Virus record (IMG/VR): IMGVR_UViG_3300022744_000022
Location: 144,487 to 208,486 of that record
Reading direction: 5' to 3' (one strand)
Length of the DNA stretch: 64,000 bases
Made by a program: the position numbers and the translations under genes. This document shows, one piece after another, positions 18,565-63,361 of this stretch. The notes under the pieces were generated by a model. That model did not search any database and had not been told where the DNA came from. It saw only the letters and a program-made list of their open reading frames with translations. Each line of letters begins with the position of its first letter. The first letter of the stretch is position 1.

Positions 18565-18590
18565 TACACCGGGGCTTGGGAAAACTCTAG
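18565..18590 (-). promoter_or_regulatory. Bipartite motif CTAGAGTT-N12-GGTGTA
   Basis: Reverse complement ctagagtt ttcccaagcccc ggtgta. Confidence 0.7.
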
Positions 18591-18610
18591 AAACGGGTTA
18601 CGCTTCTCAG

Positions 18611-18895
18611 GTGAAAACCTTACGCGAACGCCTTCAAGACTGGCACGATTGCGATGTTGCCGAATATGAACTCGGCGTAACTCTTGGGCTTTGGCCAGAA
18701 TGGGGCGGCGGGCCTCCTGGGGAAGACCCTTGGCATGGGCACAAAGGCGTCTTTTGGACCGCCAACCCCCTGGGGACCATGCTTCACGAGACCTTGGTGA
18801 GCCTGACTACACTCGGGATGCTGGAATCGAGGGAAGACGGGTTGAGCTTCCGGTGGAACCCTGCTTGGGACTCGAATTCGTTGAAGGGTGCCTAG
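18611..18895 (+). CDS. Hypothetical protein
   Basis: ORF from GTG 18611 (KTLRERLQDW...FRWNP). Confidence 0.55.
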   Translation: MKTLRERLQDWHDCDVAEYELGVTLGLWPEWGGGPPGEDPWHGHKGVFWTANPLGTMLHETLVSLTTLGMLESREDGLSFRWNPAWDSNSLKGA

Positions 18896-18917
18896 AGTTT
18901 CTCTGCTCTCCGGTGTA
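18892..18917 (+). promoter_or_regulatory. Bipartite motif CTAGAGTT-N12-GGTGTA
   Basis: ctagagtt tctctgctctcc ggtgta; ATG 8 nt downstream. Confidence 0.7.
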
Positions 18918-18925
18918 GTACCAAC

Positions 18926-19210
18926 ATGTACCGCACCGTCGAAGAACTGGCAACAGACCTCGTGGACGACGACCGTACCTCTTTCACGTTCGCGGAAGCG
19001 GACGAGCTGGCGGAGACGCTTCAAGTCACGACCGCCAAGGTGATCCGTGACCTCAAGGCGTATGGGCTGACTTACGAAGGCCGTCCGAACGAGAAGTCGG
19101 TTCGCGGGTTCACCTCAAACCCGCATGACCGTTGGTACGGTCCGGGCTCAAGTCCCACGCATGGCGGCTCGGGCTGGGAACAGATCGCTGGTTTCGGAGG
19201 TCGGGAATGA
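18926..19210 (+). CDS. Hypothetical protein
   Basis: 94-aa ORF after promoter motif. Confidence 0.65.
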   Translation: MYRTVEELATDLVDDDRTSFTFAEADELAETLQVTTAKVIRDLKAYGLTYEGRPNEKSVRGFTSNPHDRWYGPGSSPTHGGSGWEQIAGFGGRE

Positions 19211-19536
19211 AACTCCGGATGTTCACTCGGGTTGGGGTCATCAGTGCGACCGGGAAGCGCCGAAGCCGCAATGTGAGCGCTCGCAAGTGCGTCTCGATCG
19301 AAGACCTCGTTCGATGCTTTGAGCACAACCTCCGGTTCGTGACGGACCCTACGATTCAATCCATCCGTATCGATGTTCGCCGTCCGAGCAGCAACCCCGA
19401 ACTGAAAGAGTTCGAGAACGACCCGGACGGGGACTTCTCCTGGCAGCACGACGCAAAGCTTTCGGCAGAAGTGGCCGGTGTGCTCAAGAACAAGTACCCC
19501 GAGCTGCCCGTGACCATCGGGTACATTTTCGTATGA
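19207..19536 (+). CDS. Hypothetical protein
   Basis: ATGA-coupled on both sides. Confidence 0.55.
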   Translation: MKLRMFTRVGVISATGKRRSRNVSARKCVSIEDLVRCFEHNLRFVTDPTIQSIRIDVRRPSSNPELKEFENDPDGDFSWQHDAKLSAEVAGVLKNKYPELPVTIGYIFV

Positions 19537-21104
19537 AGCGCAAACCTAAAGAGACCAAGAAAGAGCGCAAGCAGCGCCTGGTCCAAGGGATCAAGGCGGC
19601 TCGCAACGCCCAGCCCGCAGCACCCCTGCACTTGGCCGATTCCGCCTACGTGGAAGCGATGCTGGACGGTTCCACTCGTCTGAATGTGGCTGCCGAAGTG
19701 GCGGCCGATCCCCGAGTCTCGATCTGGCTGCAACAGCTCGACAAGCGCATGGACCTGATCGCGAGTCGGGGCAGCGTTACCCGCAAGCAGTGTGACGTGA
19801 TCCTGAGCATCGTCCAAGAGTGGGAGAACGCCAACGCCACCAATCGGTTCAAGTCCAAGGCGGAGGCCTCTGTCTCGGTGGCCCGGATGCTCGATAGCGT
19901 GATCAAAGCGCTCCCGAAATCCAAAGTCCCGCTCACCCCTGAGCAGATACGACGCGAGGCCGAAGACATCGGAGAGCTGTCTGACGCGATCCTAGACACC
20001 AAGTCCAACTTCGTGAAGACCGCCGGTCGGGTTGTACTCCCCGAGGGTCAAGCTGCCGTTGAAACTTACCTCTACTGCATGCAGAAGCTCATGGAGGGGG
20101 CCAACGGCATCGTCAAGGACTTGGACGACAAGGGTAAGCGTGCAGGTATCGAGGCAGCCCGGCAGATTTGGGCTCAAGCTCGGGACGCGAGGGTGTTCGA
20201 GATCCCCGCTCAGATCTGGCAGAGCCAGCACCGCATTCACGAACAGCACTTCATGATGGCGATTGCCAAGCAACAGATCCCCCAAGAGGAAGCGCTGGAA
20301 TTCCTGCGTGTGAACGCACAGGTCCAACCCTTCCCGGAGAAGCTCCCGTTCGACTACTGCTACATCGGGCTCGGGGCTGGGGTCATGCTCGACTTGGCGC
20401 TGGCGAAGATGCGGATCTCCGGTTCGGACAAGAAAGAGAACGTGGTGGGGGTGTGCTTACTCGGGTACCTGATCTGCGGTCCGAACAAGCAAGTCTACGA
20501 GATGCTCCACGTCATCTTGGAGGACACCGACTTCTTTCTGCCGTTGGCCCAGCGCTACGATGGTTCATGGCCTTTCGGTGAGACTCTCGCGGCATGGCTC
20601 GTGGCTCAGATGGTGGACCTGATCAACGAGCACAACACCGTGGTAATCAACCACGAGCCCTCGCAGAAGATGAAGGCCGCTTACCGTAAGACCGGCAAAG
20701 GCGCTCCAGGCTTCCTCCCCCGGCCCTACTACACACTGCACCTGAAGCACTCGATCATTGACGAGTCCGAGCTTGAGCCCCGGAGCGAGAACGGTTTTGG
20801 CCGGACCCTGGCGTACCGCTACGACCGACGGGGGCATGAACGCTGCTACGTGGCACGCGGCCCTCTACCCATTGACGAGAAGACCGAGAAGAAGCTGCTC
20901 AAGTACGGGTACCGCTTCATCGTGGGCAAGCCTGACGCTGAGGATGCCGCTCGGCTGGCCTACCGCAACTTCCCACCCAAACGCTCGGACGAGTGGATGG
21001 CGGTCAAGGTTCGCTGGATCGAAGACGTAGTGGTGGGAGACGAGAAGCTACCGTACATCCCGGCGGTCAGAGTTCCCGAGAAGCCTCAGGTGCTAGCCCC
21101 ATGA
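19533..21104 (+). CDS. Large hypothetical protein
   Basis: 523-aa ORF with GC3-biased codons. Confidence 0.75.
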   Translation: MKRKPKETKKERKQRLVQGIKAARNAQPAAPLHLADSAYVEAMLDGSTRLNVAAEVAADPRVSIWLQQLDKRMDLIASRGSVTRKQCDVILSIVQEWENANATNRFKSKAEASVSVARMLDSVIKALPKSKVPLTPEQIRREAEDIGELSDAILDTKSNFVKTAGRVVLPEGQAAVETYLYCMQKLMEGANGIVKDLDDKGKRAGIEAARQIWAQARDARVFEIPAQIWQSQHRIHEQHFMMAIAKQQIPQEEALEFLRVNAQVQPFPEKLPFDYCYIGLGAGVMLDLALAKMRISGSDKKENVVGVCLLGYLICGPNKQVYEMLHVILEDTDFFLPLAQRYDGSWPFGETLAAWLVAQMVDLINEHNTVVINHEPSQKMKAAYRKTGKGAPGFLPRPYYTLHLKHSIIDESELEPRSENGFGRTLAYRYDRRGHERCYVARGPLPIDEKTEKKLLKYGYRFIVGKPDAEDAARLAYRNFPPKRSDEWMAVKVRWIEDVVVGDEKLPYIPAVRVPEKPQVLAP

Positions 21105-22696: not shown

Positions 22697-23248
22697 ATGG
22701 GCCACCCCGCAGGTAGCTTCTGTTCCCTTTGTCTCAAATCTGAGTCAGAGGTCCCCCGCTTGATTGTGAGCGGCACGATGGCAGCGGTTTGCACCGAGTG
22801 CATTCAGCTCTGCAACGAGATTTTGGAGGGGGACGACGAGCCTTTCACAGAGGAACCCCCGCCCCGCTACGTGGGTGGCGAGAGACCCCCTGTGCTCCCC
22901 GATACGCTCTCGATCGAGCTGTTCTACCACGCCACCGAGGTGATGCTGAACACGTTGGTGCTCTCGGGAGAACCCCAGCCCTATAGTACGGTGGCCCCCA
23001 TCGTGGGCTACCACCACCGGGACCGGAACTTCTATCGCATGCTCGGGCGGTCCCTACGTGAGGACCACGCCGCTGGACGCCCCCTCAGGGCCTCCATGGT
23101 CATCAACAAGGCTCTGGGGATGCCTGGGCAGGCCTACTTCATGGTCTGCCGTGAGCTGGGCCTGGAAGTCCCCAAGGGCGGTGAAGCGGCCTTCTGGACT
23201 GCCCAGCTCGACCGCCTCGCCCTAGAGTTTTCCGAAGTCCAAGTGTAG
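22697..23248 (+). CDS. ClpX-type C4 zinc-finger domain protein
   Basis: FCSLC.KSESEV.RLI......VCTECIQLCNEIL; no AAA+ domain. Confidence 0.7.
   Translation: MGHPAGSFCSLCLKSESEVPRLIVSGTMAAVCTECIQLCNEILEGDDEPFTEEPPPRYVGGERPPVLPDTLSIELFYHATEVMLNTLVLSGEPQPYSTVAPIVGYHHRDRNFYRMLGRSLREDHAAGRPLRASMVINKALGMPGQAYFMVCRELGLEVPKGGEAAFWTAQLDRLALEFSEVQV
23222..23247 (+). promoter_or_regulatory. Bipartite motif CTAGAGTT-N12-AGTGTA
   Basis: ATG 23257 is 9 nt downstream. Confidence 0.7.
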
Positions 23249-23256
23249 TACCCTCC

Positions 23257-23475
23257 ATGAAAGCCCTCTTGAACACGGTCTTTGCAGACGCCGCCAAGTG
23301 CCTGCACCCCAAGGCTCAGACCAAGAAGTACGTGGGCTCCACCGAGACCTACCACTACTGTCCGGACTGCATGACGACCTGGGGCGGCGAAGAGGGCCCC
23401 CGGAAGGTTGCGTTGATCGCGGCGGCGGCCCGGTACGAAGAAAGCCTTCCGATCTGGGAGTCGAGTCTGCTCTAG
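23257..23475 (+). CDS. Small Zn-binding protein
   Basis: CLH...YCPDC. Confidence 0.55.
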   Translation: MKALLNTVFADAAKCLHPKAQTKKYVGSTETYHYCPDCMTTWGGEEGPRKVALIAAAARYEESLPIWESSLL

Positions 23476-23511
23476 GTGCGGATTTAGGGCGGCGGCGGTG
23501 TAGCCTAAAGG

Positions 23512-23913
23512 ATGAGCACAGGCGTCAAACAAGTGATCGTGGTCCGTAAAGACCTCAACATGCGCAAGGGTAAAATTGCTGCCCAGGTTGCGCACGCGGC
23601 CATGATGTTCCTGATCAAGCCCGCCGAGGTCTACTGGGCTACAGACACTGTGGCTTCGTTCAAGACCCTGGTGACCCCACACCAACACGCTTGGCTCACC
23701 GGGTCCTTCACGAAGGTCGTGCCTTACTGCAACTCCGAGGCCGAGTTACGCGACCTAATCCAGAAAGCCCGAGATGCAGGAGTTGTGGTTCACGAGTGTA
23801 CAGACAACGGTCTCACCGAGTTCCACGGGGTCAAGACGCTCACCTGTGCCGCTTTTGGTCCCGATCTACCGGCAGTTCTCGACCCGATCACCGGCCACCT
23901 GTCCTTGTTGTGA
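23512..23913 (+). CDS. pth2: Peptidyl-tRNA hydrolase, Pth2 type
   Basis: KQVIVVRKDLNMRKGKIAAQVAHA, KVV, DNGLTEF, TLTC.AFGP, DPITGHLSLL. Confidence 0.92.
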   Translation: MSTGVKQVIVVRKDLNMRKGKIAAQVAHAAMMFLIKPAEVYWATDTVASFKTLVTPHQHAWLTGSFTKVVPYCNSEAELRDLIQKARDAGVVVHECTDNGLTEFHGVKTLTCAAFGPDLPAVLDPITGHLSLL

Positions 23914-23923: not shown

Positions 23924-23949
23924 CTAGAGTTCTACCCTTCCCATGTGTA
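23924..23949 (+). promoter_or_regulatory. Bipartite motif CTAGAGTT-N12-TGTGTA
   Basis: Upstream of the RNA ligase gene, which also has a GGAGAGG SD. Confidence 0.65.
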
Positions 23950-23970
23950 GTACCGGGAGAGGTTACGGCC

Positions 23971-24618
23971 ATGTCTCCCAAGTACCCCCGCACCTTTCAT
24001 CTCCCGTACAGCCCTGGCGGCACGTCGGATGACCGTCGCCTGACGGACACCCGGTCGCTGATCGGTCGTCCGTTGGTCATCACTGAGAAAATGGACGGAT
24101 CCAACGTGTCGATGGAGCGCCAAGGGTGCTTCGCTCGAAGCCACGCTTCGGCTCCGAACCACCCGAGCTTCGATGCCTTCAAGGCGTCCCATGCAGCGGT
24201 CAAACACCTGATCCCGGAAGGGGTCCAGGTGTTCGGTGAGTGGCTGTACGCCCTGCACAGCATCGGCTACCAGGCTCTCCCGAGCTACTTCCAGGTGTTC
24301 GGAGTGCGGGCCAACGGGCTGTGGGCCTCGTGGGCGGAAGTCGAGCTGTGGGCTCAAGAGCTGGGCACCGTGACGGCCCCGCTGCTAGTCGGTCCCCGCT
24401 GCTTCGAGAACCAGAACGACCTTCAGGACTGCGTAGAGCAGTTGGTCCGCAAGCCCTCGGCCTGCGGGGGCGAGCGGGAAGGCTGTGTGGTTCGCCTGGC
24501 TGGCGAGTTCGCGGATCAGGACTTCGGTACCTCGGTAGCGAAGTGGGTCCGAAAAGATCACGTCAACACGGACGACCACTGGAGCACCCAAGAGATCGTC
24601 AAGAACCGCTTGGGGTAA
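23971..24618 (+). CDS. ATP-dependent RNA ligase (Rnl2-like nucleotidyltransferase)
   Basis: KYPRT.HL, TEKMDGSN (motif I), FGEW, FQVFGV, EGCVVR, AKWVR. Confidence 0.85.
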   Translation: MSPKYPRTFHLPYSPGGTSDDRRLTDTRSLIGRPLVITEKMDGSNVSMERQGCFARSHASAPNHPSFDAFKASHAAVKHLIPEGVQVFGEWLYALHSIGYQALPSYFQVFGVRANGLWASWAEVELWAQELGTVTAPLLVGPRCFENQNDLQDCVEQLVRKPSACGGEREGCVVRLAGEFADQDFGTSVAKWVRKDHVNTDDHWSTQEIVKNRLG

Positions 24619-24643: not shown

Positions 24644-24669
24644 CTAGAGTTTAGCCTCTCTCCGGTGTA
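24644..24669 (+). promoter_or_regulatory. Bipartite motif CTAGAGTT-N12-GGTGTA inside an inverted repeat
   Basis: ATG 24679 is 9 nt downstream; ACACCGGAGAG...CTCTCCGGTGT stem. Confidence 0.7.
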
Positions 24670-24678
24670 GTAGTAATC

Positions 24679-25077
24679 ATGGGCCTGCCGCAACACCGCG
24701 TCGTTCACATTCTGCACCAAGGGCTTGCGCTCTGCGGCGCTGGACTGCCCAACAGTTGGCCCACAGCTCACCGCTGGGTGTCGATTGCGGACTACCCGAA
24801 CGAGATCGGCAAGAACAGCTTCTGTCACGAGTGTGAGGCGGTCATGACCATCCCGATCAAACAGCAAGAAGACCCTGAGCCCCCTTTCGAGGAGTGCTGC
24901 TTCTGCTTCAAATCCACACGGTTCTGGACCGTGCTGCCGGACCGCAAGGGCGGGGAGCAGGTAGCGTGCTGCCAACCGTGTTCCAAGCTCCACATCCCGT
25001 CGCAGGTGCCCTCAAAGCCCGACTGGTGTGCGGAAGCGCGTAAGAGGCGTCCCAGACTCTACCCGGGGCAACCATGA
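24679..25077 (+). CDS. Cys-rich hypothetical protein
   Basis: Several CxxC. Confidence 0.6.
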   Translation: MGLPQHRVVHILHQGLALCGAGLPNSWPTAHRWVSIADYPNEIGKNSFCHECEAVMTIPIKQQEDPEPPFEECCFCFKSTRFWTVLPDRKGGEQVACCQPCSKLHIPSQVPSKPDWCAEARKRRPRLYPGQP

Positions 25078-25367: not shown

Positions 25368-25789
25368 CCCCACAAGCCATCGATCAGGAACTCCGCCACC
25401 TTCGCTTGAAGTTCGAGCGCGAGCCCTCGGAGTTTCTCAAAGGACGCATCGCCCTCATGGAGCGGGTCCAAGAGGCGTGCCGAGCAGTCCAACCCGCTTC
25501 GATTCTAGAGGGGAGTTTGGCTGAGTGCCGTGATTGCAAAGGTTATGTGCCTGGCTTCATGGTCTTTGATTGGGTGTGGTTGGAGGGGTGGCCCTCGTAC
25601 CCAGCCGAAAAGAACGCTTTGGAGGAACGCTTTGGGAGTGGGGATCTCAGGGCAATTCTAGAGTTGTGTGTGCCTTGCCTAGAGGCTCGTTTGAAGCGCC
25701 CCCTCAGGACAGAGGATGTCTTGGCGATCCCTTTCAACGCTTGGCTTCTTACTCGACTTTATATCGCGAAATTGGGGCAAAATGATTGA
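25364..25789 (+). CDS. Hypothetical Zn-binding protein
   Basis: CRDC...FMVFDWVW...LCVPCLEARL.RPL. Confidence 0.55.
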   Translation: MTPQAIDQELRHLRLKFEREPSEFLKGRIALMERVQEACRAVQPASILEGSLAECRDCKGYVPGFMVFDWVWLEGWPSYPAEKNALEERFGSGDLRAILELCVPCLEARLKRPLRTEDVLAIPFNAWLLTRLYIAKLGQND

Positions 25790-29151: not shown

Positions 29152-29957
29152 AGCGACACCTCGTGAAAGCCGTTGGGGAAGATCCGCTTAGGCTTGGATC
29201 CCTGACGAACCCAGAAGTCGCCGTTCGGTTGCTGTCCGTTGGGACGTAGCGCACTCAACCTCGGAACGATCAAGGGCAAGATAGTCGGGGGCAACGGTTG
29301 ACGCTGGCTCGGGGCTTGGTTCATCGGGCCCACAAGGTTCGACTCGAACTCGCCCGCTGGGTCGCCCCAGATCAACGTGTGGTCTACTCGAACATCACCG
29401 GGGACAGGCGGCCGACCATCATGGGCATCGACCGTCGGGAAGAACAACCACTTCGGGAACCGGGGCCGGTACCACCAAAGCAAGGGTTCAGCCTTGATCG
29501 TGCCCGACCAGCAGCACACCGCGATGGGCCACCCCGGGTAAAGCTTCTGGTACTCCGTGAAGAAGCCGGGGGCCACCGTCGGGCGCTTGTGCTCCGCCAC
29601 GTACCCGAGGGCCTGCGGGATCGCTTCAGCGTCGGTCGCGAGCACCACTGTGTACGAACCTGAATCGAAGATCTGGACCCCAGCCCCAATGAGCGGGCCA
29701 CCCTTGGTCATCGACCGGGACCGCATCCGGCACATCATGTCCATGTCTTCGAGAAGCCAAGGGGTCGCCCGAGTGTCCACGAGGTTGTGGGGCCCCATGG
29801 CCTCAAGAGTCGGGATCGGGAGGATCATCGCGTTGGGTCCGCGAGAGTTGGCCCGGTTCTGGTACCCGAGCACATGGGCCTCAGCCCCCTCGTGCTGGAC
29901 AGAGGCCGTGTAGATGATGGTGCCGGAGAGGGTGGCTTGGCCGAGCGTGACGCACAT
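29148..29957 (-). CDS. Hypothetical protein
   Basis: 269-aa ORF; GGTGTA 10 nt before ATG. Confidence 0.7.
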   Translation of the reverse strand: MCVTLGQATLSGTIIYTASVQHEGAEAHVLGYQNRANSRGPNAMILPIPTLEAMGPHNLVDTRATPWLLEDMDMMCRMRSRSMTKGGPLIGAGVQIFDSGSYTVVLATDAEAIPQALGYVAEHKRPTVAPGFFTEYQKLYPGWPIAVCCWSGTIKAEPLLWWYRPRFPKWLFFPTVDAHDGRPPVPGDVRVDHTLIWGDPAGEFESNLVGPMNQAPSQRQPLPPTILPLIVPRLSALRPNGQQPNGDFWVRQGSKPKRIFPNGFHEVSL

Positions 29958-30047
29958 GGCTCTTATCTACACCGGCTGGCTCTGTTGAAAAAGGCTCTTG
30001 ACGCCCCACTAGGTCTTCTGTCAGTCTCCTGCCTGTAGTGGGCTCAG

Positions 30048-31592: not shown

Positions 31593-31814
31593 ATGAACTG
31601 CATTGTTAAATGGACTGGCTGGGTCATGAACGAAGAAAAACGGTGGCTTCGTGTTGAGTACCGCCACACGCAAGTGAGCGTACGCTTGGTGTCGCAACAG
31701 GAGGCCACCGTCTTTCCCATGCGCCGCGATGCTACGGCATTCTGCAAAAAGCACATACGCAAAGGGCGGTTCGGCGGTGATCTCAAGGGGCTAGAGTTTC
31801 TCCCGGCCGGGTGA
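31593..31814 (+). CDS. Hypothetical protein
   Basis: 73-aa ORF. Confidence 0.45.
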   Translation: MNCIVKWTGWVMNEEKRWLRVEYRHTQVSVRLVSQQEATVFPMRRDATAFCKKHIRKGRFGGDLKGLEFLPAG

Positions 31815-34954: not shown

Positions 34955-35245
34955 TTATGCTTTTGGAATGAAGCTTTCCACGTCAAGCATTTGGATGTCT
35001 TCCACTGAGGCCAAACCGAGCTGAACCAGTGAGCCTTCGATGAACCCAAGCCAACGTGCGGCTCGCTCCAAACGACCTTGCTCCAGCACGCTTCGCGTTT
35101 CAGCGATCATCCACCGCAGGTGGCTCGCTTCTCCCAAGATAGGGATCACGGCATCGGGCTTCCGAGAAACAGTGGCGCTAGGGAACGTCGCGATTAACCG
35201 CGAGTCGTAGTGGTCCAGAAGGCGGCGGATGTGAGGGGCGTTCAT
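34955..35245 (-). CDS. Hypothetical protein, paralog of 57788-58051
   Basis: HLRWM...RAARWLGFIEGSL. Confidence 0.65.
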   Translation of the reverse strand: MNAPHIRRLLDHYDSRLIATFPSATVSRKPDAVIPILGEASHLRWMIAETRSVLEQGRLERAARWLGFIEGSLVQLGLASVEDIQMLDVESFIPKA

Positions 35246-35446
35246 GGTTTGCCCTTACACCGTCGCAGCCACTGATCGACCCAGAGTGTCCACCGTGTCA
35301 GGCGCGAGAGATCCCCGTGGGCTTGCAGCCACTTGGCATTCTCGACGTGGTACACCCACACCCAGGGCAACCAGATCGTGAAGAAAAAAGCCACGACGCC
35401 CAGGCAACCAAGCAGGATAAGGGCACCGCCGAACGCTTCCATCAAC

Positions 35447-35632
35447 TTAGCTCTGTCCACCGGCGGCCCTCCAGGCATCCCGAGCCATCGCGACGAAGCC
35501 TTCGGCAGTGATGTCCGCTTCGGTTTCAGCGAACCGGACGATACCGCGAAGCGCTTCAAGGACTGCCTCAGCAGGCGGGCATTCCGAATTGAGCAACGCG
35601 GCCTCGACCTCTTGGTACACGGGATGCGCCAT
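35447..35632 (-). CDS. Small hypothetical protein
   Basis: GGTGTA 9 nt before ATG 35632. Confidence 0.55.
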   Translation of the reverse strand: MAHPVYQEVEAALLNSECPPAEAVLEALRGIVRFAETEADITAEGFVAMARDAWRAAGGQS

Positions 35633-47823: not shown

Positions 47824-48115
47824 GCCCTACTGTTACACCGGGCTCATCTTCTTTCAAGTGATCCCAGAGCGTCCTGAGGCTACGAGCAGGGGGCTCCAGC
47901 AATTTGGACGGTTCGACCGGGGATTCTAACTTGTACTCAGGGGGCGAGATCAGTGCCCCCTGTACAGGCGGGGTGGTGGTCGCGACCAAGTACGTGATGG
48001 TACCCCGGGAGTCCATCAAGCAGAGGCGGCCCAGCTCATCTAGGAACATGGAAGCGTACCCCCTAGGCGGGGTCTGAACGCTACTCGTTGAGGCACGTCG
48101 GAAGCGTAGCGCCAT
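47777..48115 (-). CDS. Small protein with RTLWDHLKEDE tag; paralog of 38244-38432
   Basis: MFLDELGRLCLMDSRGTITYL; GGTGTA 10 nt before ATG. Confidence 0.65.
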   Translation of the reverse strand: MALRFRRASTSSVQTPPRGYASMFLDELGRLCLMDSRGTITYLVATTTPPVQGALISPPEYKLESPVEPSKLLEPPARSLRTLWDHLKEDEPGVTVGRGNSTAKDSGHGSAD

Positions 48116-48134
48116 ACCCGAGGCCTACACCGCA

Positions 48135-48437
48135 CTAGCGGTGTCGAGCAACGGTTTGACTCAACTCATGAACCGCCCGAGCTTGTTCATTTGTCCGGGC
48201 CACGAGTTGAGTCAGCACTGCGTTTTGGGCCTCAGCCGCCCGAGCCTGGCGCTCTTGAGCCAGGGCTTGACGCTGGCTCCAGTAGACGAGCTTCCACTGA
48301 GCGTCTGAGGAGCTTTTCGCGGAGCCCGCGATCTTGTAAAGGGCCTCCGCCACGTTGGAGAAATTGTAGTAGCCCGCCTGTACCGGGACCGCGATCGTGA
48401 GCACAACCCCGAGGGCAAAACCGAATAGTACGCGCAT
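48135..48437 (-). CDS. Secreted coiled-coil protein
   Basis: Signal peptide ending VQA; GGTGTA 10 nt before ATG. Confidence 0.6.
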   Translation of the reverse strand: MRVLFGFALGVVLTIAVPVQAGYYNFSNVAEALYKIAGSAKSSSDAQWKLVYWSQRQALAQERQARAAEAQNAVLTQLVARTNEQARAVHELSQTVARHR

Positions 48438-48470
48438 GGGGTACTATTACACCGAATCAGGACACGGCGT

Positions 48471-50352: not shown

Positions 50353-50993
50353 TCGTGGAAGCGATCCTCAACTCGCTTCTTGGCCACTGCCATCGTGTGC
50401 TGCCCCGGGATGTGCTCCTGTCTTGAGCCCACCTGAGACCCAAAGGTAGCGTCATAGAGGCCGCCCCCACCATCATCCGCCACCCGCACGATCGAAACGG
50501 TGCCGATCACGACCGGGCCCACCCAACACTCTTCCGACATCGGGCTGCGGGACACCCAAGAGAACAGGGAGCCGCTCTTGTAGGGAGGGTTCGTAGGCGG
50601 GTTGGTTAGCACCTTGGCGAGCACTGGGGACTTGGCCGAGAGTTTGGCGACGATCAATTCCTCGATCGCGTGTACGACCTGATCCGCTGCATCGTCAGTA
50701 GTGTCTTCGGACCCGAAAACCAAATCCCGTAACCGCATGGCCAAGAGATCGTGGGCGTGAGACTCGGGTGGCCCCGACATCGCCTGCATCGACCTCAAGA
50801 CCCCCTGGACCCGGGTCAGCCGGGCGCTCTGCCGCAGCTTCCGGAACTTCCTCAGCGCTTCTTCGGCAGCGGTACCGTAGTCAGGCCCCCGGTACTTCTC
50901 GCACGAAAGGGAATCCGTGACCACGTGGGCCGAACTAGACCCCACTTCCCGAGCTTGACGCCGGATCAACTCATCGACGGTCCAGTTCACCAT
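50334..50993 (-). CDS. Hypothetical protein
   Basis: GGTGTA 9 nt before ATG. Confidence 0.6.
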   Translation of the reverse strand: MVNWTVDELIRRQAREVGSSSAHVVTDSLSCEKYRGPDYGTAAEEALRKFRKLRQSARLTRVQGVLRSMQAMSGPPESHAHDLLAMRLRDLVFGSEDTTDDAADQVVHAIEELIVAKLSAKSPVLAKVLTNPPTNPPYKSGSLFSWVSRSPMSEECWVGPVVIGTVSIVRVADDGGGGLYDATFGSQVGSRQEHIPGQHTMAVAKKRVEDRFHEWLSGR

Positions 50994-51024
50994 GGCTTCT
51001 ACTACACCGAAAACCGGGATCGAT

Positions 51025-51525
51025 TCAAGAGTCGTTCAATTTGTCCCACAGGGAAGTGGGCGGCGGTTCTTCCCGGGGCTCATCGAACATCGCCTCATCG
51101 CTCAACTGGACCAGCACCGGGGCGTTCCGCAGGGGGCACCAATCGGGAGTTCCGCTCTGAGGTACCGGCCGTTCCGCCAACCTGGTGCATCTCTGGATAG
51201 AGCAGAACGGGCAGCTCTGGCACCCGTCCACCGACTGGGATCCGACTTGCAGGGTCCTCAGGGACGGTTCTTCGGTGTCCCAGCACGCCATGCAGGCCGA
51301 ACGCATCCGCCCATCCGCAGAGATACTCGCGGAGAACCGTTCTCCACAGGACACGCAAGCGTGTGTCCACACGGGGGTGTCGTCTTCCTCAGGTGCCGCC
51401 ATGGGTTGAACGTAGTCTTCAAGGTGAAGCGGTTCCATCGCGTACACACGGCAGTCCGAGCACTCGCCCCTTCTCAGACGCAGCTCATCTTCGACTTCAA
51501 CACCGCAGCCGGTACAAGTGGGCAC
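51025..51525 (-). CDS. Cys-rich protein with C-terminal TSLWDKLNDS tag
   Basis: Multiple CxxC, PDWCPL; GGTGTA 9 nt before GTG. Confidence 0.65.
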   Translation of the reverse strand: MPTCTGCGVEVEDELRLRRGECSDCRVYAMEPLHLEDYVQPMAAPEEDDTPVWTHACVSCGERFSASISADGRMRSACMACWDTEEPSLRTLQVGSQSVDGCQSCPFCSIQRCTRLAERPVPQSGTPDWCPLRNAPVLVQLSDEAMFDEPREEPPPTSLWDKLNDS

Positions 51526-56645: not shown

Positions 56646-57779
56646 CTATTGCTCATAGGTGACTTGGAATAGGGTCGGGTTGATCACCGAGACGTAGCTG
56701 CTCACGTCGCAGTGATCATCGGACTGGAAGGCGTACGCGAGGCCGTCTTGGCAATTCGCGTGGATCTCTTTCGAGTAGTGGTTGGTGATCGGGTCCTGGT
56801 AAAAACCAGCCTTGTCCTTGCACCACTGGCAGTCCGAGGAATTGGCGAGCGTCTGGACCGTGAGCATAACCGAGCGGTTGAACGCGGCACAGAGCGTACC
56901 CATGAGCTGGTTCGCGTAGTTCTCTTGCAGCGACCCCGGTGCCCCGCGTCCCGAAAAGCAGAAGCGGAAGTTGTTCTCGAACAGGTCCTGGGTCGAAGGG
57001 ACGCTCAAGACGATCGGCTCCAGGGGCAGATCGCTCGTCTTGAACACGAACAGGCCCTCTTGAACTCGCCCCACCCACTGCACGAAGGTGTTGGAACCTG
57101 GGGGCGGATCGCCCACGAAGGTCAAGTCAGCGCTCTCGAAACGATCCCAAACCTGATCGCAGTACATCTTGAGGTACTGGGCATCGATCAAAGGCTTGGG
57201 GATCACCCCCTGCTTGAACGCCGTGATCGCGGTTCCCGGAGCGAGCACTCGTTCAGGGAGTATGAGTCCACGGAAGTCCGGGTTGGCCTGCATGGCCTCC
57301 AGGAACTTGCTGTAGCCGCCTGAGAGCCACCCACGCTGGTAGTCCACGGGTTGCCGGGTTGAGGGTTCCTGGCCCGCACAACGGAACGACAGGGGCATGC
57401 CAGCGCTCTGGACGTTCGACAGGTTCAGGTTGAACAGGCCGTCTTGGCCCACCGGGACGTACGTAACCTCGAAAAAGTCCCACCGGGTCCCGTAGTTGAG
57501 ATCCTGAGGATCCTGCGGCCTCGGGGGGATCGCGTTGCCCGCCTGATCCACCGTGAGCCACAGGGGCTTATCCGAGAGATACAGACGGGCTGCCGACAAC
57601 ATGGGAAAGGGCAGGGACCCCGTGACGGGGAACGACAAGGCCTCAGTGGGCTTCTCCGACGGTACCGACGGCACCGCATTACCCTGTGCGTCACAATGGC
57701 GGGGCTTGCCGCTCACGGGATCCAGGCCGTAGTAGGTGAACCACAGGCCTTGGGCGTTCAGGAATTCGAGTTGGAGCAT
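56646..57779 (-). CDS. GH64 beta-1,3-glucanase-like protein
   Basis: DP.D.NY...WDFFEVT, NLSNV, RVLAP, LCAAFNRS, NHYSK.IH, G.AYAF..DD; start ATG 57779. Confidence 0.8.
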   Translation of the reverse strand: MLQLEFLNAQGLWFTYYGLDPVSGKPRHCDAQGNAVPSVPSEKPTEALSFPVTGSLPFPMLSAARLYLSDKPLWLTVDQAGNAIPPRPQDPQDLNYGTRWDFFEVTYVPVGQDGLFNLNLSNVQSAGMPLSFRCAGQEPSTRQPVDYQRGWLSGGYSKFLEAMQANPDFRGLILPERVLAPGTAITAFKQGVIPKPLIDAQYLKMYCDQVWDRFESADLTFVGDPPPGSNTFVQWVGRVQEGLFVFKTSDLPLEPIVLSVPSTQDLFENNFRFCFSGRGAPGSLQENYANQLMGTLCAAFNRSVMLTVQTLANSSDCQWCKDKAGFYQDPITNHYSKEIHANCQDGLAYAFQSDDHCDVSSYVSVINPTLFQVTYEQ

Positions 57780-57787
57780 GGCCCTCT

Positions 57788-58051
57788 TTACACCGTAGGT
57801 GCGTTGTCCCGACGCATCGCATCGATCCCCCGCAGGCCCATCACCCACAGAGCACCTTGAACGAAGCCGAGCCAACGCATCGCCTTGTCGAGATCCTGAG
57901 TCAAGAAGACCTCGATCTCACCGCACATCCAGAGCAAGTGCCGGGCTCGCTCAAGCGGCTCCAGGGCTTCGATGTTGCGGACCGGCCCCAAGTCCGGGTA
58001 AGCGGTCCGGAGCGTCTCTCGGGCCGCCTCGATGGCTCGTAGGGCCTGCAT
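57788..58051 (-). CDS. Hypothetical protein, paralog of 34955-35245
   Basis: HLLWM...KAMRWLGFVQGAL. Confidence 0.65.
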   Translation of the reverse strand: MQALRAIEAARETLRTAYPDLGPVRNIEALEPLERARHLLWMCGEIEVFLTQDLDKAMRWLGFVQGALWVMGLRGIDAMRRDNAPTV

Positions 58052-58368
58052 CACGGCCACCTGATCGTGCAGCCCTTTAGGATGCCGCAGCACAAGGTAC
58101 CTTCGACGGTCACCCGGGTCAGCGGCTTGCCGGGTTCCACGACCTCGGGACGCTTCGCTCGAAAAGACTCGACCCAAACGTCCCCGGTCCCGCACTCAAA
58201 GAAGTCGTAGCCCTTCCTCGACACGTCTTGAAGCCCCTCGGAATGCATGGCCCCTTGAAGCCTAACCTCGGAAGGACTACACCCCCCGTACTTGGCCACC
58301 GTGACGTACAGAAAGATGTAGGCCAGGGGCCAGATCAAGGACCAACCCGAGGATGAAGATCTCGTCAT
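58051..58368 (-). CDS. Membrane-anchored Cys-containing protein
   Basis: TM, F.CG..D...F.A...V.G.LCCG..KGCTIR; GGTGTA 9 nt before ATG. Confidence 0.6.
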   Translation of the reverse strand: MTRSSSSGWSLIWPLAYIFLYVTVAKYGGCSPSEVRLQGAMHSEGLQDVSRKGYDFFECGTGDVWVESFRAKRPEVVEPGKPLTRVTVEGTLCCGILKGCTIRWP

Positions 58369-58387
58369 GGTGCTTAGTACACCGCCG

Positions 58388-61404: not shown

Positions 61405-61592
61405 GGTCCGTAGCCTTCCGCCTGATCCGCACACTCATCGCACTGGTACCCCAGCGCCTTGTCCTTGGGCGTCAGCCGATTGGGCTGCTTGCAGGTAGGG
61501 CAGGGGAGGTTCCGAGGGTTGCTCTTGGAAGCCGCCCGTAGGGCCGACTTACCCCCTGGATCCGCGAAGTCCATGTCGTTGTCGTCGTCCAT
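61401..61592 (-). CDS. Small Zn-ribbon protein
   Basis: PCPTC..PNRLT..D...GYQCDECAD. Confidence 0.65.
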   Translation of the reverse strand: MDDDNDMDFADPGGKSALRAASKSNPRNLPCPTCKQPNRLTPKDKALGYQCDECADQAEGYGP

Positions 61593-61600
61593 ACCGCTAA

Positions 61601-61626
61601 CACACCTGGGATCTGGAGAACTCTAG
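61601..61626 (-). promoter_or_regulatory. Bipartite motif CTAGAGTT-N12-GGTGTG
   Basis: ATG 61592 is 8 nt downstream. Confidence 0.65.
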
Positions 61627-62355: not shown

Positions 62356-62368
62356 GGTAGGGTCACTA

Positions 62369-62632
62369 TTACACCGGACGGCCAACAGGGTCAACGGCCC
62401 CGGGTGGGGGCGGTGGCGTCCCCGTCTGACGCACCGAGCCTTTGCGGACCCGATGAAGCAAGCAGTATCGAGTCTTGCCCGAGCGCCGAAACAAGGCCTT
62501 GCAGTCCGGATCCCCGCACTCGATCATCACAACCTTGGGCTTGCGGCACTCAAGACAGAGCTTACGGACCCCGTGCCCGGTCCAATCCCCACAGCCCTCG
62601 CACTTGCCTGACTTGAGATCGTGCGGCCTCAT
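62369..62632 (-). CDS. Cys-rich small protein
   Basis: CxxC pairs. Confidence 0.5.
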   Translation of the reverse strand: MRPHDLKSGKCEGCGDWTGHGVRKLCLECRKPKVVMIECGDPDCKALFRRSGKTRYCLLHRVRKGSVRQTGTPPPPPGAVDPVGRPV

Positions 62633-62985
62633 TTGCGAGGTATGTTCGGCCTCGGGTTCATGAGATCAGGAAGCTTCACCTCTTCCCCCTGCTTGAACGA
62701 GTCGGACCGCTCGCACTCCCGAAAGCACCACTTGTTCATCTGAGCGCCGTCCTGATCGGTGAGCGGCACCGCACTCGGCTTCATGTGCCCGCCCTCAGAG
62801 AGCCCTACGGTCTCACCTGGCCCCGGCGCTGTACCCAGCTTGTCGTCAGCCAGATACACGTAATCGTCGAGATCCTCCGACAACATTGTCTTGGGCCGCC
62901 CGTTGTGCCCCCACGCTTTGTCGCAACGCCCGTCACAGGCCATCGTGAGCTGCTGGCCGTACCCCAGGATCTGTTTGGTTGGCAT
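62629..62985 (-). CDS. Hypothetical protein
   Basis: ACDG.C.KAWG...NKWC.RECER; GGTGTA 10 nt before ATG. Confidence 0.65.
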   Translation of the reverse strand: MPTKQILGYGQQLTMACDGRCDKAWGHNGRPKTMLSEDLDDYVYLADDKLGTAPGPGETVGLSEGGHMKPSAVPLTDQDGAQMNKWCFRECERSDSFKQGEEVKLPDLMNPRPNIPRK

Positions 62986-63041
62986 CGAGACAGGTTACAC
63001 CGGCCCCGAGGACTTTGCCTAGCCCGTCGTCACTTGGGGGT

Positions 63042-63323
63042 TCATGGAGCGGGTTCGTCCAACCGCCGACCCAGGTTCCGTTCCTTGGCCTCGACGTACC
63101 GTGACCTGTTGTGCATGATCATGCGGGTCAAGATGCGTTCAGCGATCCCCGCATCGCCAGCCGCGATGCGGGCGGTCACTTCACGTTCGAGCGTCTCGAA
63201 CTCCGCCGTCGTGAGGATGTGTGGATCGTAGGCGCGAAACCGGATGACAGCTTCGAGCTTCTCGGGTTTCTTGTCGTCGGTCATGGCTCTTCTTCTTTTG
63301 GGAGAGGGTAGCGGACCCGCCAC
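63042..63323 (-). CDS. Hypothetical protein
   Basis: ORF after bipartite motif. Confidence 0.5.
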   Translation of the reverse strand: MAGPLPSPKRRRAMTDDKKPEKLEAVIRFRAYDPHILTTAEFETLEREVTARIAAGDAGIAERILTRMIMHNRSRYVEAKERNLGRRLDEPAP

Positions 63324-63335
63324 GCTGTCGGGTAC

Positions 63336-63361
63336 TACACTTGAGGCCCAGGGAACTCTAG
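63336..63361 (-). promoter_or_regulatory. Bipartite motif CTAGAGTT-N12-AGTGTA
   Basis: Reverse complement ctagagtt ccctgggcctca agtgta. Confidence 0.65.

What the first reader, a model, noticed from the sequence alone, without database searches (positions are those of the whole stretch)
18565..63361. Upstream box CTAGAGTT at an invariant 12-nt spacing marks a promoter subclass
Seen: CTAGAGTT-N12-NGTGT(A/G) at 18565-18590(-), 18892-18917, 23222-23247, 23924-23949, 24644-24669, 61601-61626(-), 63336-63361(-), with variant CTAGAAGT at 37106. At 14746 the same slot holds sigma70-like TTGACGTT. The downstream box tolerates mismatches (AGTGTA, TGTGTA, GGTGTG) in copies that have CTAGAGTT, which looks like compensation between two elements. 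Inference: a non-canonical -35 read by a phage or alternative sigma factor, or an activator site like the T4 MotA box.
Basis: partly seen in the sequence, partly recalled or inferred. Interest (0 to 1): 0.7.

Follow-up and report, generated by a model that had tools for sequence, protein, structure and literature searches.

The report
Phage promoter class for leaderless genes
The repeated CTAGAGTT box, 13 bases upstream of GTGTAGTACC and about 34 bases upstream of an ATG, is a real, conserved promoter class of an uncultivated freshwater huge phage that launches mRNAs with no leader, most likely read by a sigma factor the phage itself encodes.

Summary
CTAGAGTT occurs 10 times in the window (0.9 expected). 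Seven copies carry NGTGTR exactly 12 nt downstream (0.01 expected), all pointing at a gene.

- In 5 of these 7 sites (8 of 11 in the contig) an ATG lies 13-14 nt after the first G of the downstream box, so the transcripts should be leaderless.
- The downstream box is a long form of GGTGTA, the general -10-like element of the genome. GGTGTA followed 8-10 nt later by ATG occurs 18 times in the window (0.5 expected).
- Promoters without CTAGAGTT need an exact GGTGTA.

The window is the end of a 208-kb fragment of a ~0.4-0.47 Mb freshwater phage. About 55 distinct copies of the module occur in related metagenome contigs. More distant relatives keep the architecture but change the box (CTGGAGTT, CTTGAATT, GCTGAAC).

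The clade encodes two tandem ECF-like sigma factors behind a host-type TTGACR-N17-TAG promoter. One such pair lies on a contig from the window's own sample. Two complete relatives gave no hit to RNA polymerase, MotA or AsiA families.

Best reading: a sigma cascade of the SPO1 kind, with CTAGAGTT as the -35 element of a phage sigma. No start site has been mapped.

The parts
18554..18590 (-). Two-box promoter plus start codon. Box CTAGAGTT at 18583-18590, GTGTAGTACC at 18560-18569, ATG at 18554-18556. It drives a 63-aa ORFan (18365-18556).
   Evidence: The orthologous site in G001 keeps both boxes.
18892..18928 (+). Two-box promoter, divergent partner of the previous one. Box at 18892-18899, GTGTAGTACC at 18913-18922, ATG at 18926. 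It drives a 94-aa gene (18926-19210) and probably the operon through 21104.
   Evidence: Conserved in G001 and in L152/L170.
23222..23259 (+). Two-box promoter. Box at 23222-23229, (A)GTGTAGTACC at 23243-23252, ATG at 23257. It drives a 72-aa ORFan (23257-23475). The box overlaps the end of the upstream ORF.
23924..23973 (+). Two-box promoter with a leader. Box at 23924-23931, (T)GTGTAGTACC at 23945-23954, Shine-Dalgarno-like GGGAGAGG, ATG at 23971. It drives the RNA ligase gene (23971-24618).
   Evidence: RNA_ligase hit in Pfam 4.5e-26 and PHROG 6e-47.
24644..24681 (+). Two-box promoter. Box at 24644-24651, GTGTAGTAGT at 24665-24674, ATG at 24679. It drives a 132-aa gene (24679-25077).
   Evidence: The G001 orthologue has CTAGAGTA and an identical -10.
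61590..61626 (-). Two-box promoter. Box at 61619-61626, weakened -10 GTGTGTTAGC at 61596-61605, ATG at 61590-61592. It drives a 63-aa ORFan (61401-61592).
63331..63361 (-). Two-box promoter with a leader. Box at 63354-63361, (A)GTGTAGTACC at 63331-63340. The gene is 63042-63323 (GTG start) or starts at the ATG at 63284 behind a purine-rich stretch.
37106..37148 (+). Variant. CTAGAAGT at 37106-37113, exact GGTGTA at 37126-37131 (GTGTAATG), ATG at 37146. The gene is 37146-37922. It is back to back with a GGTGTA site on the other strand (37095-37100).
14746..14791 (+). Same architecture with a host-type -35. TTGACGTT at 14746-14753, GTGTAATAGT at 14767-14776 with the same 13-nt gap, and a second GTGTAGTAGT at 14782-14791. 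The gene starts at GTG 14822.
   Evidence: TTGACGTT and both GGTGTA copies are conserved in G001.
8940..8958 (+). Promoter of the general class: exact GGTGTA, then ATG with no leader. It drives the HNH endonuclease-like gene 8956-9351.
23497..23514 (+). General GGTGTA leaderless promoter for the gene 23512-23913, which matches phage peptidyl-tRNA hydrolase genes at the DNA level.
29955..29973 (-). General GGTGTA leaderless promoter for the gene 29148-29957.
35243..35261 (-). General GGTGTA leaderless promoter for the gene 34955-35245.
35630..35647 (-). General GGTGTA leaderless promoter for a 61-codon ORF.
38430..38448 (-). General GGTGTA leaderless promoter for a 62-codon ORF.
39575..39592 (-). 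General GGTGTA leaderless promoter for the gene 39020-39577.
40044..40061 (+). General GGTGTA leaderless promoter for the gene 40059-40439. Conserved in G001.
48113..48131 (-). General GGTGTA leaderless promoter for the gene 47777-48115.
48435..48453 (-). General GGTGTA leaderless promoter for the gene 48135-48437.
50991..51030 (-). GGTGTAGTA leaderless promoter with TTGAAT in the -35 slot, for the gene 50334-50993. Conserved in G001.
57777..57794 (-). GGTGTA-N9-ATG. It points to an ATG at 57779 as the start of the gene called 56646-57875.
58366..58383 (-). GGTGTA-N9-ATG upstream of the ORF ending at 58051.
62983..63001 (-). General GGTGTA leaderless promoter for the gene 62629-62985.
31791..31798 (+). 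Orphan CTAGAGTT in the gap between the RtcB gene and the next gene. It has a typical pyrimidine-rich spacer but no GTGTA box. It may be a decayed promoter.
25658..25665 (+). Orphan CTAGAGTT without the downstream box.
36160..36167 (+). Orphan CTAGAGTT without the downstream box.

Best explanation
CTAGAGTT-N12-nGTGTrGTACC-N3-ATG is a two-element promoter class of an uncultivated freshwater huge phage (a 208-kb fragment, 0.4-0.47 Mb expected).

If transcription starts at the A of the ATG, the box lies at -34 to -27 and GTGTrGTACC at -13 to -4. The mRNA then has no 5' leader and no Shine-Dalgarno site. This geometry is inferred, not mapped.

The downstream block is the strong form of GGTGTA, the genome-wide -10-like element. 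An exact GGTGTA alone serves about 30 other leaderless genes in the contig, mostly for replication and nucleotide metabolism. The CTAGAGTT class serves small ORFans, an RNA ligase, a methyltransferase and a DUF932 protein. It tolerates a weaker GGTGTA because the box adds binding energy.

The inferred reader is host core RNA polymerase carrying a phage-encoded ECF-like sigma factor. The clade has two tandem candidates, of about 330 aa and about 252 aa. The variable C-terminal helix-turn-helix of the sigma would contact the box, and its conserved region-2.4-like segment would contact GTGTA.

The sigma genes sit behind a host-type TTGACR-N17-TAG promoter. The program would therefore be a cascade:
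1. Host sigma-A transcribes the phage sigma genes.
2. The phage sigma then transcribes the CTAGAGTT and GGTGTA promoters.

Shown:
- the motif, its spacing, orientation, conservation and lineage-specific box changes;
- the existence and fold of the sigma-like proteins.

Inferred:
- the start site;
- which sigma reads which class;
- the timing.
For: Statistics and geometry:
- An ATG lies 13-14 nt after the first G of the -10 box in 8 of 11 contig sites, and in 41 of 55 distinct sites across the clade.
- There is no conservation outside -34 to +4.

General class:
- 33 of 117 GGTGTA in the contig have an ATG at offset 15 or 16, against 0-1 for control hexamers.
- The same holds in relatives: G011 47 against a control of 3, G013 39 against 7, G015 22 against 0.

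Compensation.

Conservation:
- The syntenic relative G001 (~80% nucleotide identity) keeps both boxes while spacers and flanks drift.
- The metagenome scan gave 37 loci, including 9 sites in 11.5 kb of a second contig from the same sample.

Lineage-specific boxes in the same slot:
- G010: GCTGAAC-N16-GTAGTA in at least 21 sites.
- G013: CTTGAATT in 25 sites.
- G011: yTAGAGwt. G012: CTGGAGTT.

Sigma factors:
- The 330-aa family has 52 homologues, two of them named sigma24 by JGI.
- Sigma70_r2 hits are sub-threshold but fall at the same N-terminal place.
- The AF2 model has pLDDT 82. 17 of the top 18 VIA matches are sigma factors, with sigma-E at Z 7.8 across both domains.
- The 252-aa neighbour also matches ECF sigmas best in an unbiased search of 48,000 chains.
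- One gene pair lies on Ga0228700_1000227, from the same sample as the window. Another lies in the sample of G001.
- That contig maps to a part of the complete relative G011 that the window's contig does not cover.

Promoters of the sigma genes:
- A host-type TTGACR-N17-TAG lies upstream in every lineage.
- G010 also carries its own class promoter there.

Sigma alignment: the region-2.4-like segment is nearly invariant, and the C-terminal recognition helix varies with the box.

Alternatives not found:
- No Rpb2_6 match in two complete relatives. The T7-type search also found nothing, but its control rang nowhere, so it is inconclusive.
- No Rpb1_2 or Rpb2_6 match in G000 or G001.
- No MotCF or AsiA match.
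Against: - No transcript 5' end is available. No RNA run holding this DNA was listed, so leaderless initiation and the -35/-10 numbering rest on geometry.
- The sigma genes are not on the window's contig. Their link to it rests on the shared sample, the shared motif clade and the map onto a complete relative.
- Sequence evidence for sigma identity is below Pfam's cut-off (12.5-18.8 bits against 24), and a profile search of PDB sequences found nothing.
- Fold Z-scores of 7-7.8 are in the range the tool calls middling for helical proteins.
- Covariation between box and sigma helix rests on a handful of lineages and is descriptive.
- Many small 'early-looking' genes depending on a sigma that must first be made is unusual, unless the sigma is injected or these genes are delayed-early.
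- Site collection outside the contig used the motif as bait, so conservation of the baited positions is partly circular.
Confidence: 0.6

Rival explanations
1. Host sigma-A holoenzyme reads the GTGTA/TAGTAC -10 region, and a phage DNA-binding activator docks on CTAGAGTT in place of the -35 contact. This is sigma appropriation or class-II activation, like T4 MotA/AsiA but with unrelated proteins. One candidate is the Zn-ribbon plus helix-turn-helix protein at window 8540-8923.
For: - The box is centred near -30, where a MotA box sits (geometry).
- TTGACGTT or TTGAAT can occupy the same slot in front of the same -10 element.
- The window encodes a 127-aa protein with a Sigma70_r4-like helix-turn-helix at 21.8 bits.
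- The contig also encodes an XRE-type helix-turn-helix protein.
Against: - There is no MotCF or AsiA match in the contig or in two complete relatives.
- The -10 region lacks the T at the last hexamer position that sigma-A needs (TAGTAC, TAGTAG, TAGTAA).
- The clade has its own sigma-like genes, which makes an adaptor unnecessary.
Confidence: 0.15
2. The module is read by a sigma factor of the unknown host: either an alternative or ECF sigma that the phage exploits, or an unusual housekeeping sigma.
For: - The two rigidly spaced blocks are typical of alternative-sigma promoters.
- The G010 version, TGAAC-N15-CGTA, resembles cellular ECF promoters. This comparison is from my own knowledge of sigma-W and sigma-E type consensus sequences.
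Against: - The box differs between closely related phage lineages, including CTAGAGTT against CTGGAGTT. A conserved host sigma would not explain that.
- The canonical TTGACR -35 is used in front of the sigma genes in every lineage, so the hosts have ordinary sigma-A specificity.
- The host is unknown, so no host genome could be scanned.
Confidence: 0.1
3. A phage-encoded RNA polymerase, virion-borne or early and too divergent to detect, recognises the whole -34 to +1 region without any sigma factor.
For: - Huge phages often carry their own polymerases (PMC7598289, PMC7824862).
- Conservation runs up to -4, and the start is fixed.
- Several proteins of 1,400-2,000 aa in the contig have no family match.
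Against: - No Rpb1_2 or Rpb2_6 match in G000 or G001 and no Rpb2_6 match in two complete relatives. The T7-type search found nothing there either, but its control rang nowhere, so it is inconclusive.
- No convincing DxDGD-type motif in the contig's proteins.
- A two-block layout with a variable spacer is not typical of single-subunit polymerase promoters (my own knowledge).
Confidence: 0.08
4. It is not a promoter. It could be a repeated cassette spread by recombination, an operator for a repressor, or a translation signal.
For: - The exact 8-mer is unusually invariant for a promoter element.
- One copy lies in the loop of a hairpin (24632-24665, read).
Against: - Every copy is oriented toward a gene start at a fixed distance.
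- Similarity stops at the edges of the module.
- The box is not palindromic.
- The same -10 block works with other -35 boxes in relatives.
- With the ATG only 3 nt past the -10 block, there is no room for an RNA-level signal upstream of it.
Confidence: 0.05

Closest known systems
Bacillus phage SPO1 sigma cascade (host sigma-A for early genes, phage gp28 for middle, gp33/34 for late)
   Same: The phage sigma genes lie behind a host-type promoter. Phage-specific two-block promoters with a non-host -35 then take over, using host core enzyme. The SPO1 outline is from the abstract of PMC13401047.
   Different: - The sigma-like proteins here resemble ECF sigmas by fold, and one has a ~130-aa insertion. 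Neither reaches Pfam's cut-off.
- The promoters fire directly onto the start codon.
- The -35 box differs between sister lineages.
- Nothing here is tested biochemically.
T4 middle promoters (MotA box at -30 plus a sigma-70 -10; MotA and AsiA)
   Same: A non-canonical box replaces the -35 element at a fixed distance from a -10 element, and it marks a temporal subclass.
   Different: - The box sequence is unrelated.
- There are no MotA or AsiA homologues.
- The -10 is not TAnnnT.
Cellular ECF sigma promoters (for example GGAAC or TGAAC -35 with CGT-type -10, rigid spacing, often autoregulated)
   Same: - Both blocks are highly conserved, the spacer length is rigid, and little degeneracy is tolerated.
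- In relative G010 the motif is TGAAC-N15-CGTA, and it precedes the sigma gene itself.
   Different: - In the window's lineage the -35 lacks the AAC core and the -10 is TGTA rather than CGT.
- No anti-sigma factor was identified.
- A second class uses the -10 element alone.
Extended -10 against -35 compensation at sigma-70 promoters
   Same: An exact, extended -10 (GGTGTA) makes the -35 dispensable, and a good -35 box permits a weaker -10.
   Different: The sequences are different, and so presumably is the sigma factor.
Leaderless genes of Actinobacteria and Deinococcus-Thermus (TANNNT about 10 nt upstream of the start codon; PMC3160421, PMC3898074)
   Same: A -10-like element sits at a fixed short distance from the ATG, with no Shine-Dalgarno site.
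   Different: The element is GGTGTA or GTGTAGTAC, not TANNNT. It belongs to a phage program conserved across phages of 44-60% G+C.

Membership tests
Bacterial two-element (-35/-10) sigma-dependent promoter | Two conserved blocks separated by a spacer of fixed length, oriented toward a gene | tested here: met
   All 11 contig sites share one spacing and point at the next gene. 55 distinct sites occur across the clade.
Bacterial two-element (-35/-10) sigma-dependent promoter | A transcript 5' end 5-9 nt downstream of the -10 block | not testable with these tools
   Only a DNA run holds the sequence, and no RNA run was listed.
Housekeeping sigma-70/sigma-A promoter | TTGACA-like -35 and TAnnnT -10 | tested here: not met
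   The consensus scan of 17500-26500 found 0 sites. The box is CTAGAGTT, and the hexamer TAGTAC lacks the final T.
T4 MotA-dependent middle promoter | A MotA box (TGCTT core) at -30 | tested here: not met
   The box is CTAGAGTT. The MotA consensus is from my own knowledge.
T4 MotA-dependent middle promoter | MotA and AsiA proteins encoded by the phage | tested here: not met
   No MotCF or AsiA match in G000 or in the complete relatives G011 and G013. Analogues without sequence similarity cannot be excluded.
ECF-sigma-type promoter | Rigid spacing and strong conservation of both blocks | tested here: met
ECF-sigma-type promoter | An AAC core in the -35 and a CGT core in the -10 | tested here: inconclusive
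   Met in relative G010, which has CTGAAC and CGTAGTA. Not met in the window's lineage, which has CTAGAGTT and GTGTAGTA.
ECF-sigma-type promoter | A cognate sigma gene present and preceded by its own promoter | tested here: inconclusive
   G010's sigma-like gene has the class promoter and also a TTGACA type. In the CTAGAGTT lineage only the host-type promoter was seen upstream.
Sigma-70 family protein (for the 330-aa protein) | Sigma70_r2 or r4 domains above the curated cut-off | tested here: not met
   Scores are 12.5-18.8 bits against a cut-off of 24. One homologue has a precomputed PF04542 hit, and two carry JGI's sigma24 name.
Sigma-70 family protein (for the 330-aa protein) | A sigma-2 plus sigma-4 fold | tested here: met
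   AF2 model with pLDDT 82. Sigma-E 6jbq_F gives Z 7.8 over residues 8-327, and 17 of the top 18 matches are sigma factors. The Z values are middling by the tool's own note.
Sigma-70 family protein (for the 330-aa protein) | Binds core RNA polymerase and directs initiation | not testable with these tools
   The host is unknown, and no complex job was run.
Leaderless mRNA gene | A -10-like element about 10 nt upstream of the start codon, with no room for a Shine-Dalgarno site | tested here: met
Phage sigma cascade (SPO1 type) | A phage sigma gene under a host-type promoter, and phage-specific promoters elsewhere | tested here: met
   TTGACR-N17-TAG lies upstream of the sigma genes in L146, L193, L194 and G011-G015.

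The most novel reading that the evidence does not exclude
A whole clade of uncultivated 0.4-0.5 Mb phages runs most of its pre-late program as leaderless mRNAs. The promoters are read by two phage-encoded, insertion-bearing ECF-like sigma factors. The sigma-4/-35 pairs have diversified between sister lineages (CTAGAGTT, CTGGAGTT, TTTAGrTy, CTTGAATT, GCTGAAC), while the -10 reading (GTGTA) stays fixed. That would make the clade a natural series of mutually orthogonal sigma-promoter pairs, perhaps keeping co-infecting relatives from reading each other's genes.
Probability: 0.4. Interest if true: 0.75.

Novelty: new variant of a known kind. Interest (0 to 1): 0.6.

Why it matters
- Transcription programs of uncultivated huge phages are almost unknown. 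Here a complete, testable regulatory logic can be read from sequence alone: a host-type promoter, then phage sigma genes, then two phage promoter classes.
- The promoters place the start site on the start codon. That fixes gene starts for dozens of ORFans and implies a host that translates leaderless mRNA well.
- The lineage-specific -35 boxes, paired with a variable sigma-4 helix, offer a natural experiment on how sigma-promoter specificity evolves. They are also candidate orthogonal parts for synthetic biology.
- The motif is also a practical marker. It recruited other contigs of the same phage and its relatives out of metagenomes.

Tried and rejected
- **RNA evidence.** One DNA run (a freshwater metagenome, probably the source) holds the region, and no RNA run was listed.
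- **IMG/VR scan with the 16-base motif.** It returned 43 loci. Almost all are chance or unrelated AT-rich hits, and only L012 (G001) was a true relative.
- **Relatives of the RNA ligase gene.** The 67 loci are spread over many unrelated phages and lack the motif. The search was useful only for leading to G010.
- **Relatives of the 523-aa protein.** None were found.
- **Consensus scan.** It found no sigma-70 promoters and no excess of terminators in 17500-26500.
- **TTGAC[AGT] in non-coding DNA of the contig.** It is not enriched: 42 of 274 sites in 13% of the sequence.
- **Sigma-like proteins by sequence.** The profile search against PDB sequences found no hit. Foldseek E-values were all above 0.1. 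hhalign between the two sigma-like families was not significant.
- **PHROGs.** Nothing for the sigma-like proteins or for most promoter-proximal genes.
- **Cultured relatives.** No cultured phage carries the 330-aa protein.
- **Source names.** The cluster look-up added none beyond the two JGI sigma24 labels already seen.
- **Metagenome contigs.** They could not be searched by family.
- **Last script.** My final script failed, so some part coordinates and the hypergeometric p were worked out by hand from earlier outputs.
- **Complex prediction.** Not run, because a protein-DNA job gives no verdict.
- **Archaeal BRE/TATA reading.** I considered it and dropped it, because Shine-Dalgarno sites, TTGACA promoters and sigma-like proteins all point to a bacterial host.

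Full report
**1. What the window is**

The window is the last 64 kb of a single 208,486-bp contig with 58.7% G+C. The contig is an IMG/VR virus record without terminal repeats, rated 44% complete. Its JGI name is Ga0228700_1000016. The only public run that holds it is a freshwater metagenome.

Gene content fits a tailed phage. It includes baseplate J, a 1251-aa virion or tail-spike-like protein, family A DNA polymerase, an intein-bearing DnaB-like helicase, RtcB, an RNA ligase and a peptidyl-tRNA hydrolase-like gene. No cultured phage is close, and the polymerase is at most 26% identical to GenBank phages. Complete relatives with terminal repeats are 398 and 412 kb.

**2. The observation**

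CTAGAGTT occurs 10 times in the window against 0.89 expected.

The whole contig has 16 boxes. Ten have GTGTAGTA (up to 1 mismatch) starting exactly 13 nt after the box and at no other distance, and an eleventh has GTGTGTTA there. Relaxing the box to 1 or 2 mismatches adds no site at that spacing, so within this genome the 8-mer is essentially invariant. All 11 point at the neighbouring gene.

The CTAGAAGT variant (37106) and the TTGACGTT site (14746) have the same gap. Three further boxes (25658, 31791, 36160) have no downstream partner.

**3.

In 8 of the 11 sites an ATG that opens the downstream ORF lies 13 or 14 nt after the first G of GTGTAGTACC. If transcription starts on that A, three things follow:
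- The box spans -34 to -27.
- The second block spans -13 to -4.
- The mRNA has no leader.

The three exceptions have leaders. At least the RNA ligase gene (GGGAGAGG) and the genome-121203 gene (GGAG) have a Shine-Dalgarno-like stretch.

**4. The downstream box is the general promoter element of the genome**

GGTGTAG, with its neighbours CGGTGTA and TGGTGTA, is the most enriched 7-mer in gene-upstream regions. It occurs in 23 of 107 regions against 1.7 expected.

Of 117 GGTGTA in the contig, 33 have an ATG at offset 15 or 16, and 31 of those open ORFs of at least 50 codons. Three control hexamers give 0-4, mostly 0-1. In the window, GGTGTA-N8-10-ATG occurs 18 times against 0.49 expected.

These box-less promoters show no common sequence in the -35 slot. 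They precede an SNF2 helicase, an AAA ATPase, DUF1848, a deoxyribosyltransferase-like protein, a dNMP kinase, a NUDIX-NrtR protein, the Pth-like gene and an HNH protein. The CTAGAGTT promoters precede small ORFans, the RNA ligase, a methyltransferase and a DUF932 protein.

**5. Compensation**

Candidate first ATGs were used as anchors.
- At offsets 15-16, used by box-less promoters, GGTGTA is exact in 27 sites and off by one in 4. That is the background level seen at irrelevant offsets.
- At offset 14, used by the CTAGAGTT class, it is exact in 2 and off by one in 6.
- Among the 11 sites themselves, 5 are exact.

The class also sits 1-2 nt closer to the ATG and has its own extension (GTACC), so it is a distinct type rather than the general promoter plus an add-on.

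**6. Conservation**

G001 (IMG/VR 3300036760_000306, 116 kb) is collinear with 55-201 kb of the contig at about 80% identity. It has 7 copies of the module against 0 for the reversed control. In orthologous pairs the boxes persist while spacers and flanks change. Single changes give CTGGAGTT and CTAGAGTA.

A metagenome scan with the 18-base form returned 37 loci, nearly all 55-60% G+C. Some are densely packed:
- L157, from a second contig of the same sample: 9 sites in 11.5 kb.
- L164: 6 sites in 5.8 kb.
- L167: 8 sites in 7 kb.

Across 55 distinct sites the consensus is CTAGAGTT-tccc.g..C.c.g-GTGTaGTAcC-.gc-ATGg. The ATG is 13 nt after G1 in 36 sites and 14 nt after it in 5. Information content outside the module is zero. 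That rules out spread by duplication of larger segments. The baited positions are of course conserved by construction.

**7. More distant relatives keep the architecture but change the box**

G010 (252 kb, polymerase 60% identical) keeps GGTGTA at offsets 15-16. It also has at least 21 copies of GCTGAAC-N16-GTAGTA(C/G)-N4-5-ATG.

Boxes by lineage:

| Relative | Size and status | Box in the -35 slot |
|---|---|---|
| G013 | 412 kb, complete, 44% G+C | CTTGAATT, 25 copies (CTTGAATT-N13-GTGTAGTAAT-agat-ATG) |
| G011 | 398 kb, complete | yTAGAGwt, in front of GTGTAATA preceded by a non-G |
| G012 | 133-kb fragment | CTGGAGTT |
| G014 | 323-kb fragment | TTTAGrTy |

Aligned on GTAGTA, all these boxes occupy the same eight positions. 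GGTGTA-N9-10-ATG is enriched in every one of these genomes.

**8. Who reads it**

Family searches found no RNA polymerase:
- The contig and G001 have no Sigma70_r2, Rpb1_2 or Rpb2_6 match.
- The complete relatives G011 and G013 have no Rpb2_6, MotCF or AsiA match. A T7-type polymerase search there also found nothing, but its control rang nowhere, so it is inconclusive.

G010 has a 290-aa protein with a sub-threshold Sigma70_r2 hit. It sits behind both a TTGACA-N18 promoter and a GCTGAAC-class promoter. Its homologue, about 330 aa and 29% identical, is present in CTAGAGTT-clade contigs:
- L146.
- Ga0228700_1000227, from the window's own sample, 84% identical to L146's copy.
- Ga0373620_0000640, from G001's sample.

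The family has 52 members on contigs up to 434 kb, and two are named sigma24 by JGI.

An AlphaFold model (pLDDT 82) aligns best to sigma factors. E. coli sigma-E gives Z 7.8 across residues 8-327, and 17 of the top 18 matches are sigma factors. Between sigma-2 and sigma-4 there is an extra, partly beta-strand insertion of about 130 aa.

The gene immediately downstream (about 252 aa) also finds ECF sigmas first in an unbiased search of 48,161 chains, at Z up to 7.0. By the tool's own warning these Z values are middling. Sequence-only tests fail or are weak.

On the complete relative G011 the window's contig maps mainly to 100-260 kb, while the sigma contig maps to 380-398 kb. This is what is expected if the sigma contig carries part of the 56% that the window's contig lacks.

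**9. Cascade**

In every lineage the sigma pair is preceded by TTGAC(A/G/T), a spacer of mostly 17-18 nt, then TA(G/C)nnn, followed by a long leader with a Shine-Dalgarno-like site in the lineages examined. This is an ordinary bacterial -35.

In the sigma alignment the region-2.4-like stretch (QFxNYL..AVLNHYANFCRT..RRHKER) is almost invariant, even in G010. That matches the invariant GTGTA/GTAGTA element. The C-terminal recognition helix varies, matching the variable box:

| Lineage box | Recognition helix |
|---|---|
| CTAGAGTT | PPKVRNAVLDTIR |
| CTTGAATT (G013) | PPKICKSIFEMVR |
| GCTGAAC (G010) | TPAKKRICIRAFL |

This is descriptive, not a statistical covariation test. Which of the two sigma-like proteins serves which promoter class is open. 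One sigma could read both classes, using the box when it is present. Alternatively, each protein could serve one class.

**10. Comparison with known systems**

The logic is that of phage sigma cascades such as SPO1 (PMC13401047). It is not that of T4 MotA/AsiA, whose defining proteins and box are absent.

Sigma factors had been noted in T4-like jumbo phages but not in other groups (PMC7824862). This clade has a family A polymerase and no cultured member.

The promoter resembles ECF promoters in rigidity and, in G010, in sequence. It resembles actinobacterial leaderless genes (PMC3160421, PMC3898074) only in geometry.

**11. Verdict**

It is a promoter class (confidence about 0.85) that very probably produces leaderless mRNAs. 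It is most likely read by a phage-encoded ECF-like sigma factor (about 0.6). It is a new variant of a known kind of system, found in a clade where nothing was known.

Noticed in passing
L063:14711-14783 (contig 134711-134783, outside the window): ARAGORN finds a single tRNA in the contig, an amber suppressor with anticodon CTA (labelled Pyl). Long ORFs read well in the standard code (87% coding with table 11), so I saw no sign of TAG recoding in this fragment.
   Followed up: partly
L060:9165-11936 (contig 69165-71936): The DnaB-like helicase gene carries an intein with a LAGLIDADG homing endonuclease domain.
   Followed up: no
window 18591-18891: The two divergent CTAGAGTT promoters are about 300 bp apart here but only about 40 bp apart in the relative G001. 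This phage has therefore gained a non-coding insertion of roughly 250-300 bp between them.
   Followed up: partly
window 24632-24665: An 8-bp inverted repeat (CCGGAGAG / CTCTCCGG) encloses the CTAGAGTT box of the 24644 promoter in an 18-nt loop, right after the RNA ligase gene. It might be a terminator-like or regulatory hairpin overlapping the promoter.
   Followed up: no
window 8540-8923 (+): A 127-aa protein with two Cys-rich zinc-ribbon-like motifs and a C-terminal Sigma70_r4-like helix-turn-helix (21.8 bits, just under the cut-off). It is conserved in G001 and is a candidate transcription regulator.
   Followed up: partly
window 23512-24618 and 30170-31588: An RNA-repair set lies close together: a peptidyl-tRNA hydrolase-like gene, an RNA ligase and RtcB. 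This suggests a counter-measure against host tRNA or RNA cleavage.
   Followed up: no
window 984-2219 and 10845-12677: A Ser/Thr kinase-like protein (PHROG 6.6e-44) and a 610-aa protein with a Zeta-toxin-like kinase domain.
   Followed up: no
L062:2793-5906 (contig 102793-105906): A 1037-aa polyvalent-type protein combines an LPD1 domain, a eukaryotic-type topoisomerase I catalytic core and DUF5661.
   Followed up: no
contig 66444-66461 and 80614-80631; G001 about 103650: Some box-less GGTGTA promoters of replication genes have (C)TCGGAAC or TCCGAAC directly upstream of GGTGTA. This may be another regulatory site.
   Followed up: no
window 31791-31798: An orphan CTAGAGTT lies in the gap after the RtcB gene. 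It has the usual pyrimidine-rich spacer but TGATCGGG where GTGTAGTA should be, and looks like a decayed promoter.
   Followed up: no
L070 (IMG/VR 3300028920_000022, 459 kb): An unrelated huge phage with a homologous RNA ligase uses a textbook TTGACA-N17-TATCAT-N6-ATG leaderless promoter. Leaderless starts may be common among huge phages.
   Followed up: no
G011:C1:250258-250377 (-): There is a third weak Sigma70_r2-like hit (E 0.08) in a 257-aa frame of the complete relative. It might be a further, perhaps late, sigma-like gene.
   Followed up: no
L193:2990-5512; L194:12566-15821: The sigma gene pair is followed in every lineage examined by an N6/N4 DNA methyltransferase and an MT-A70 methyltransferase.
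   Followed up: no
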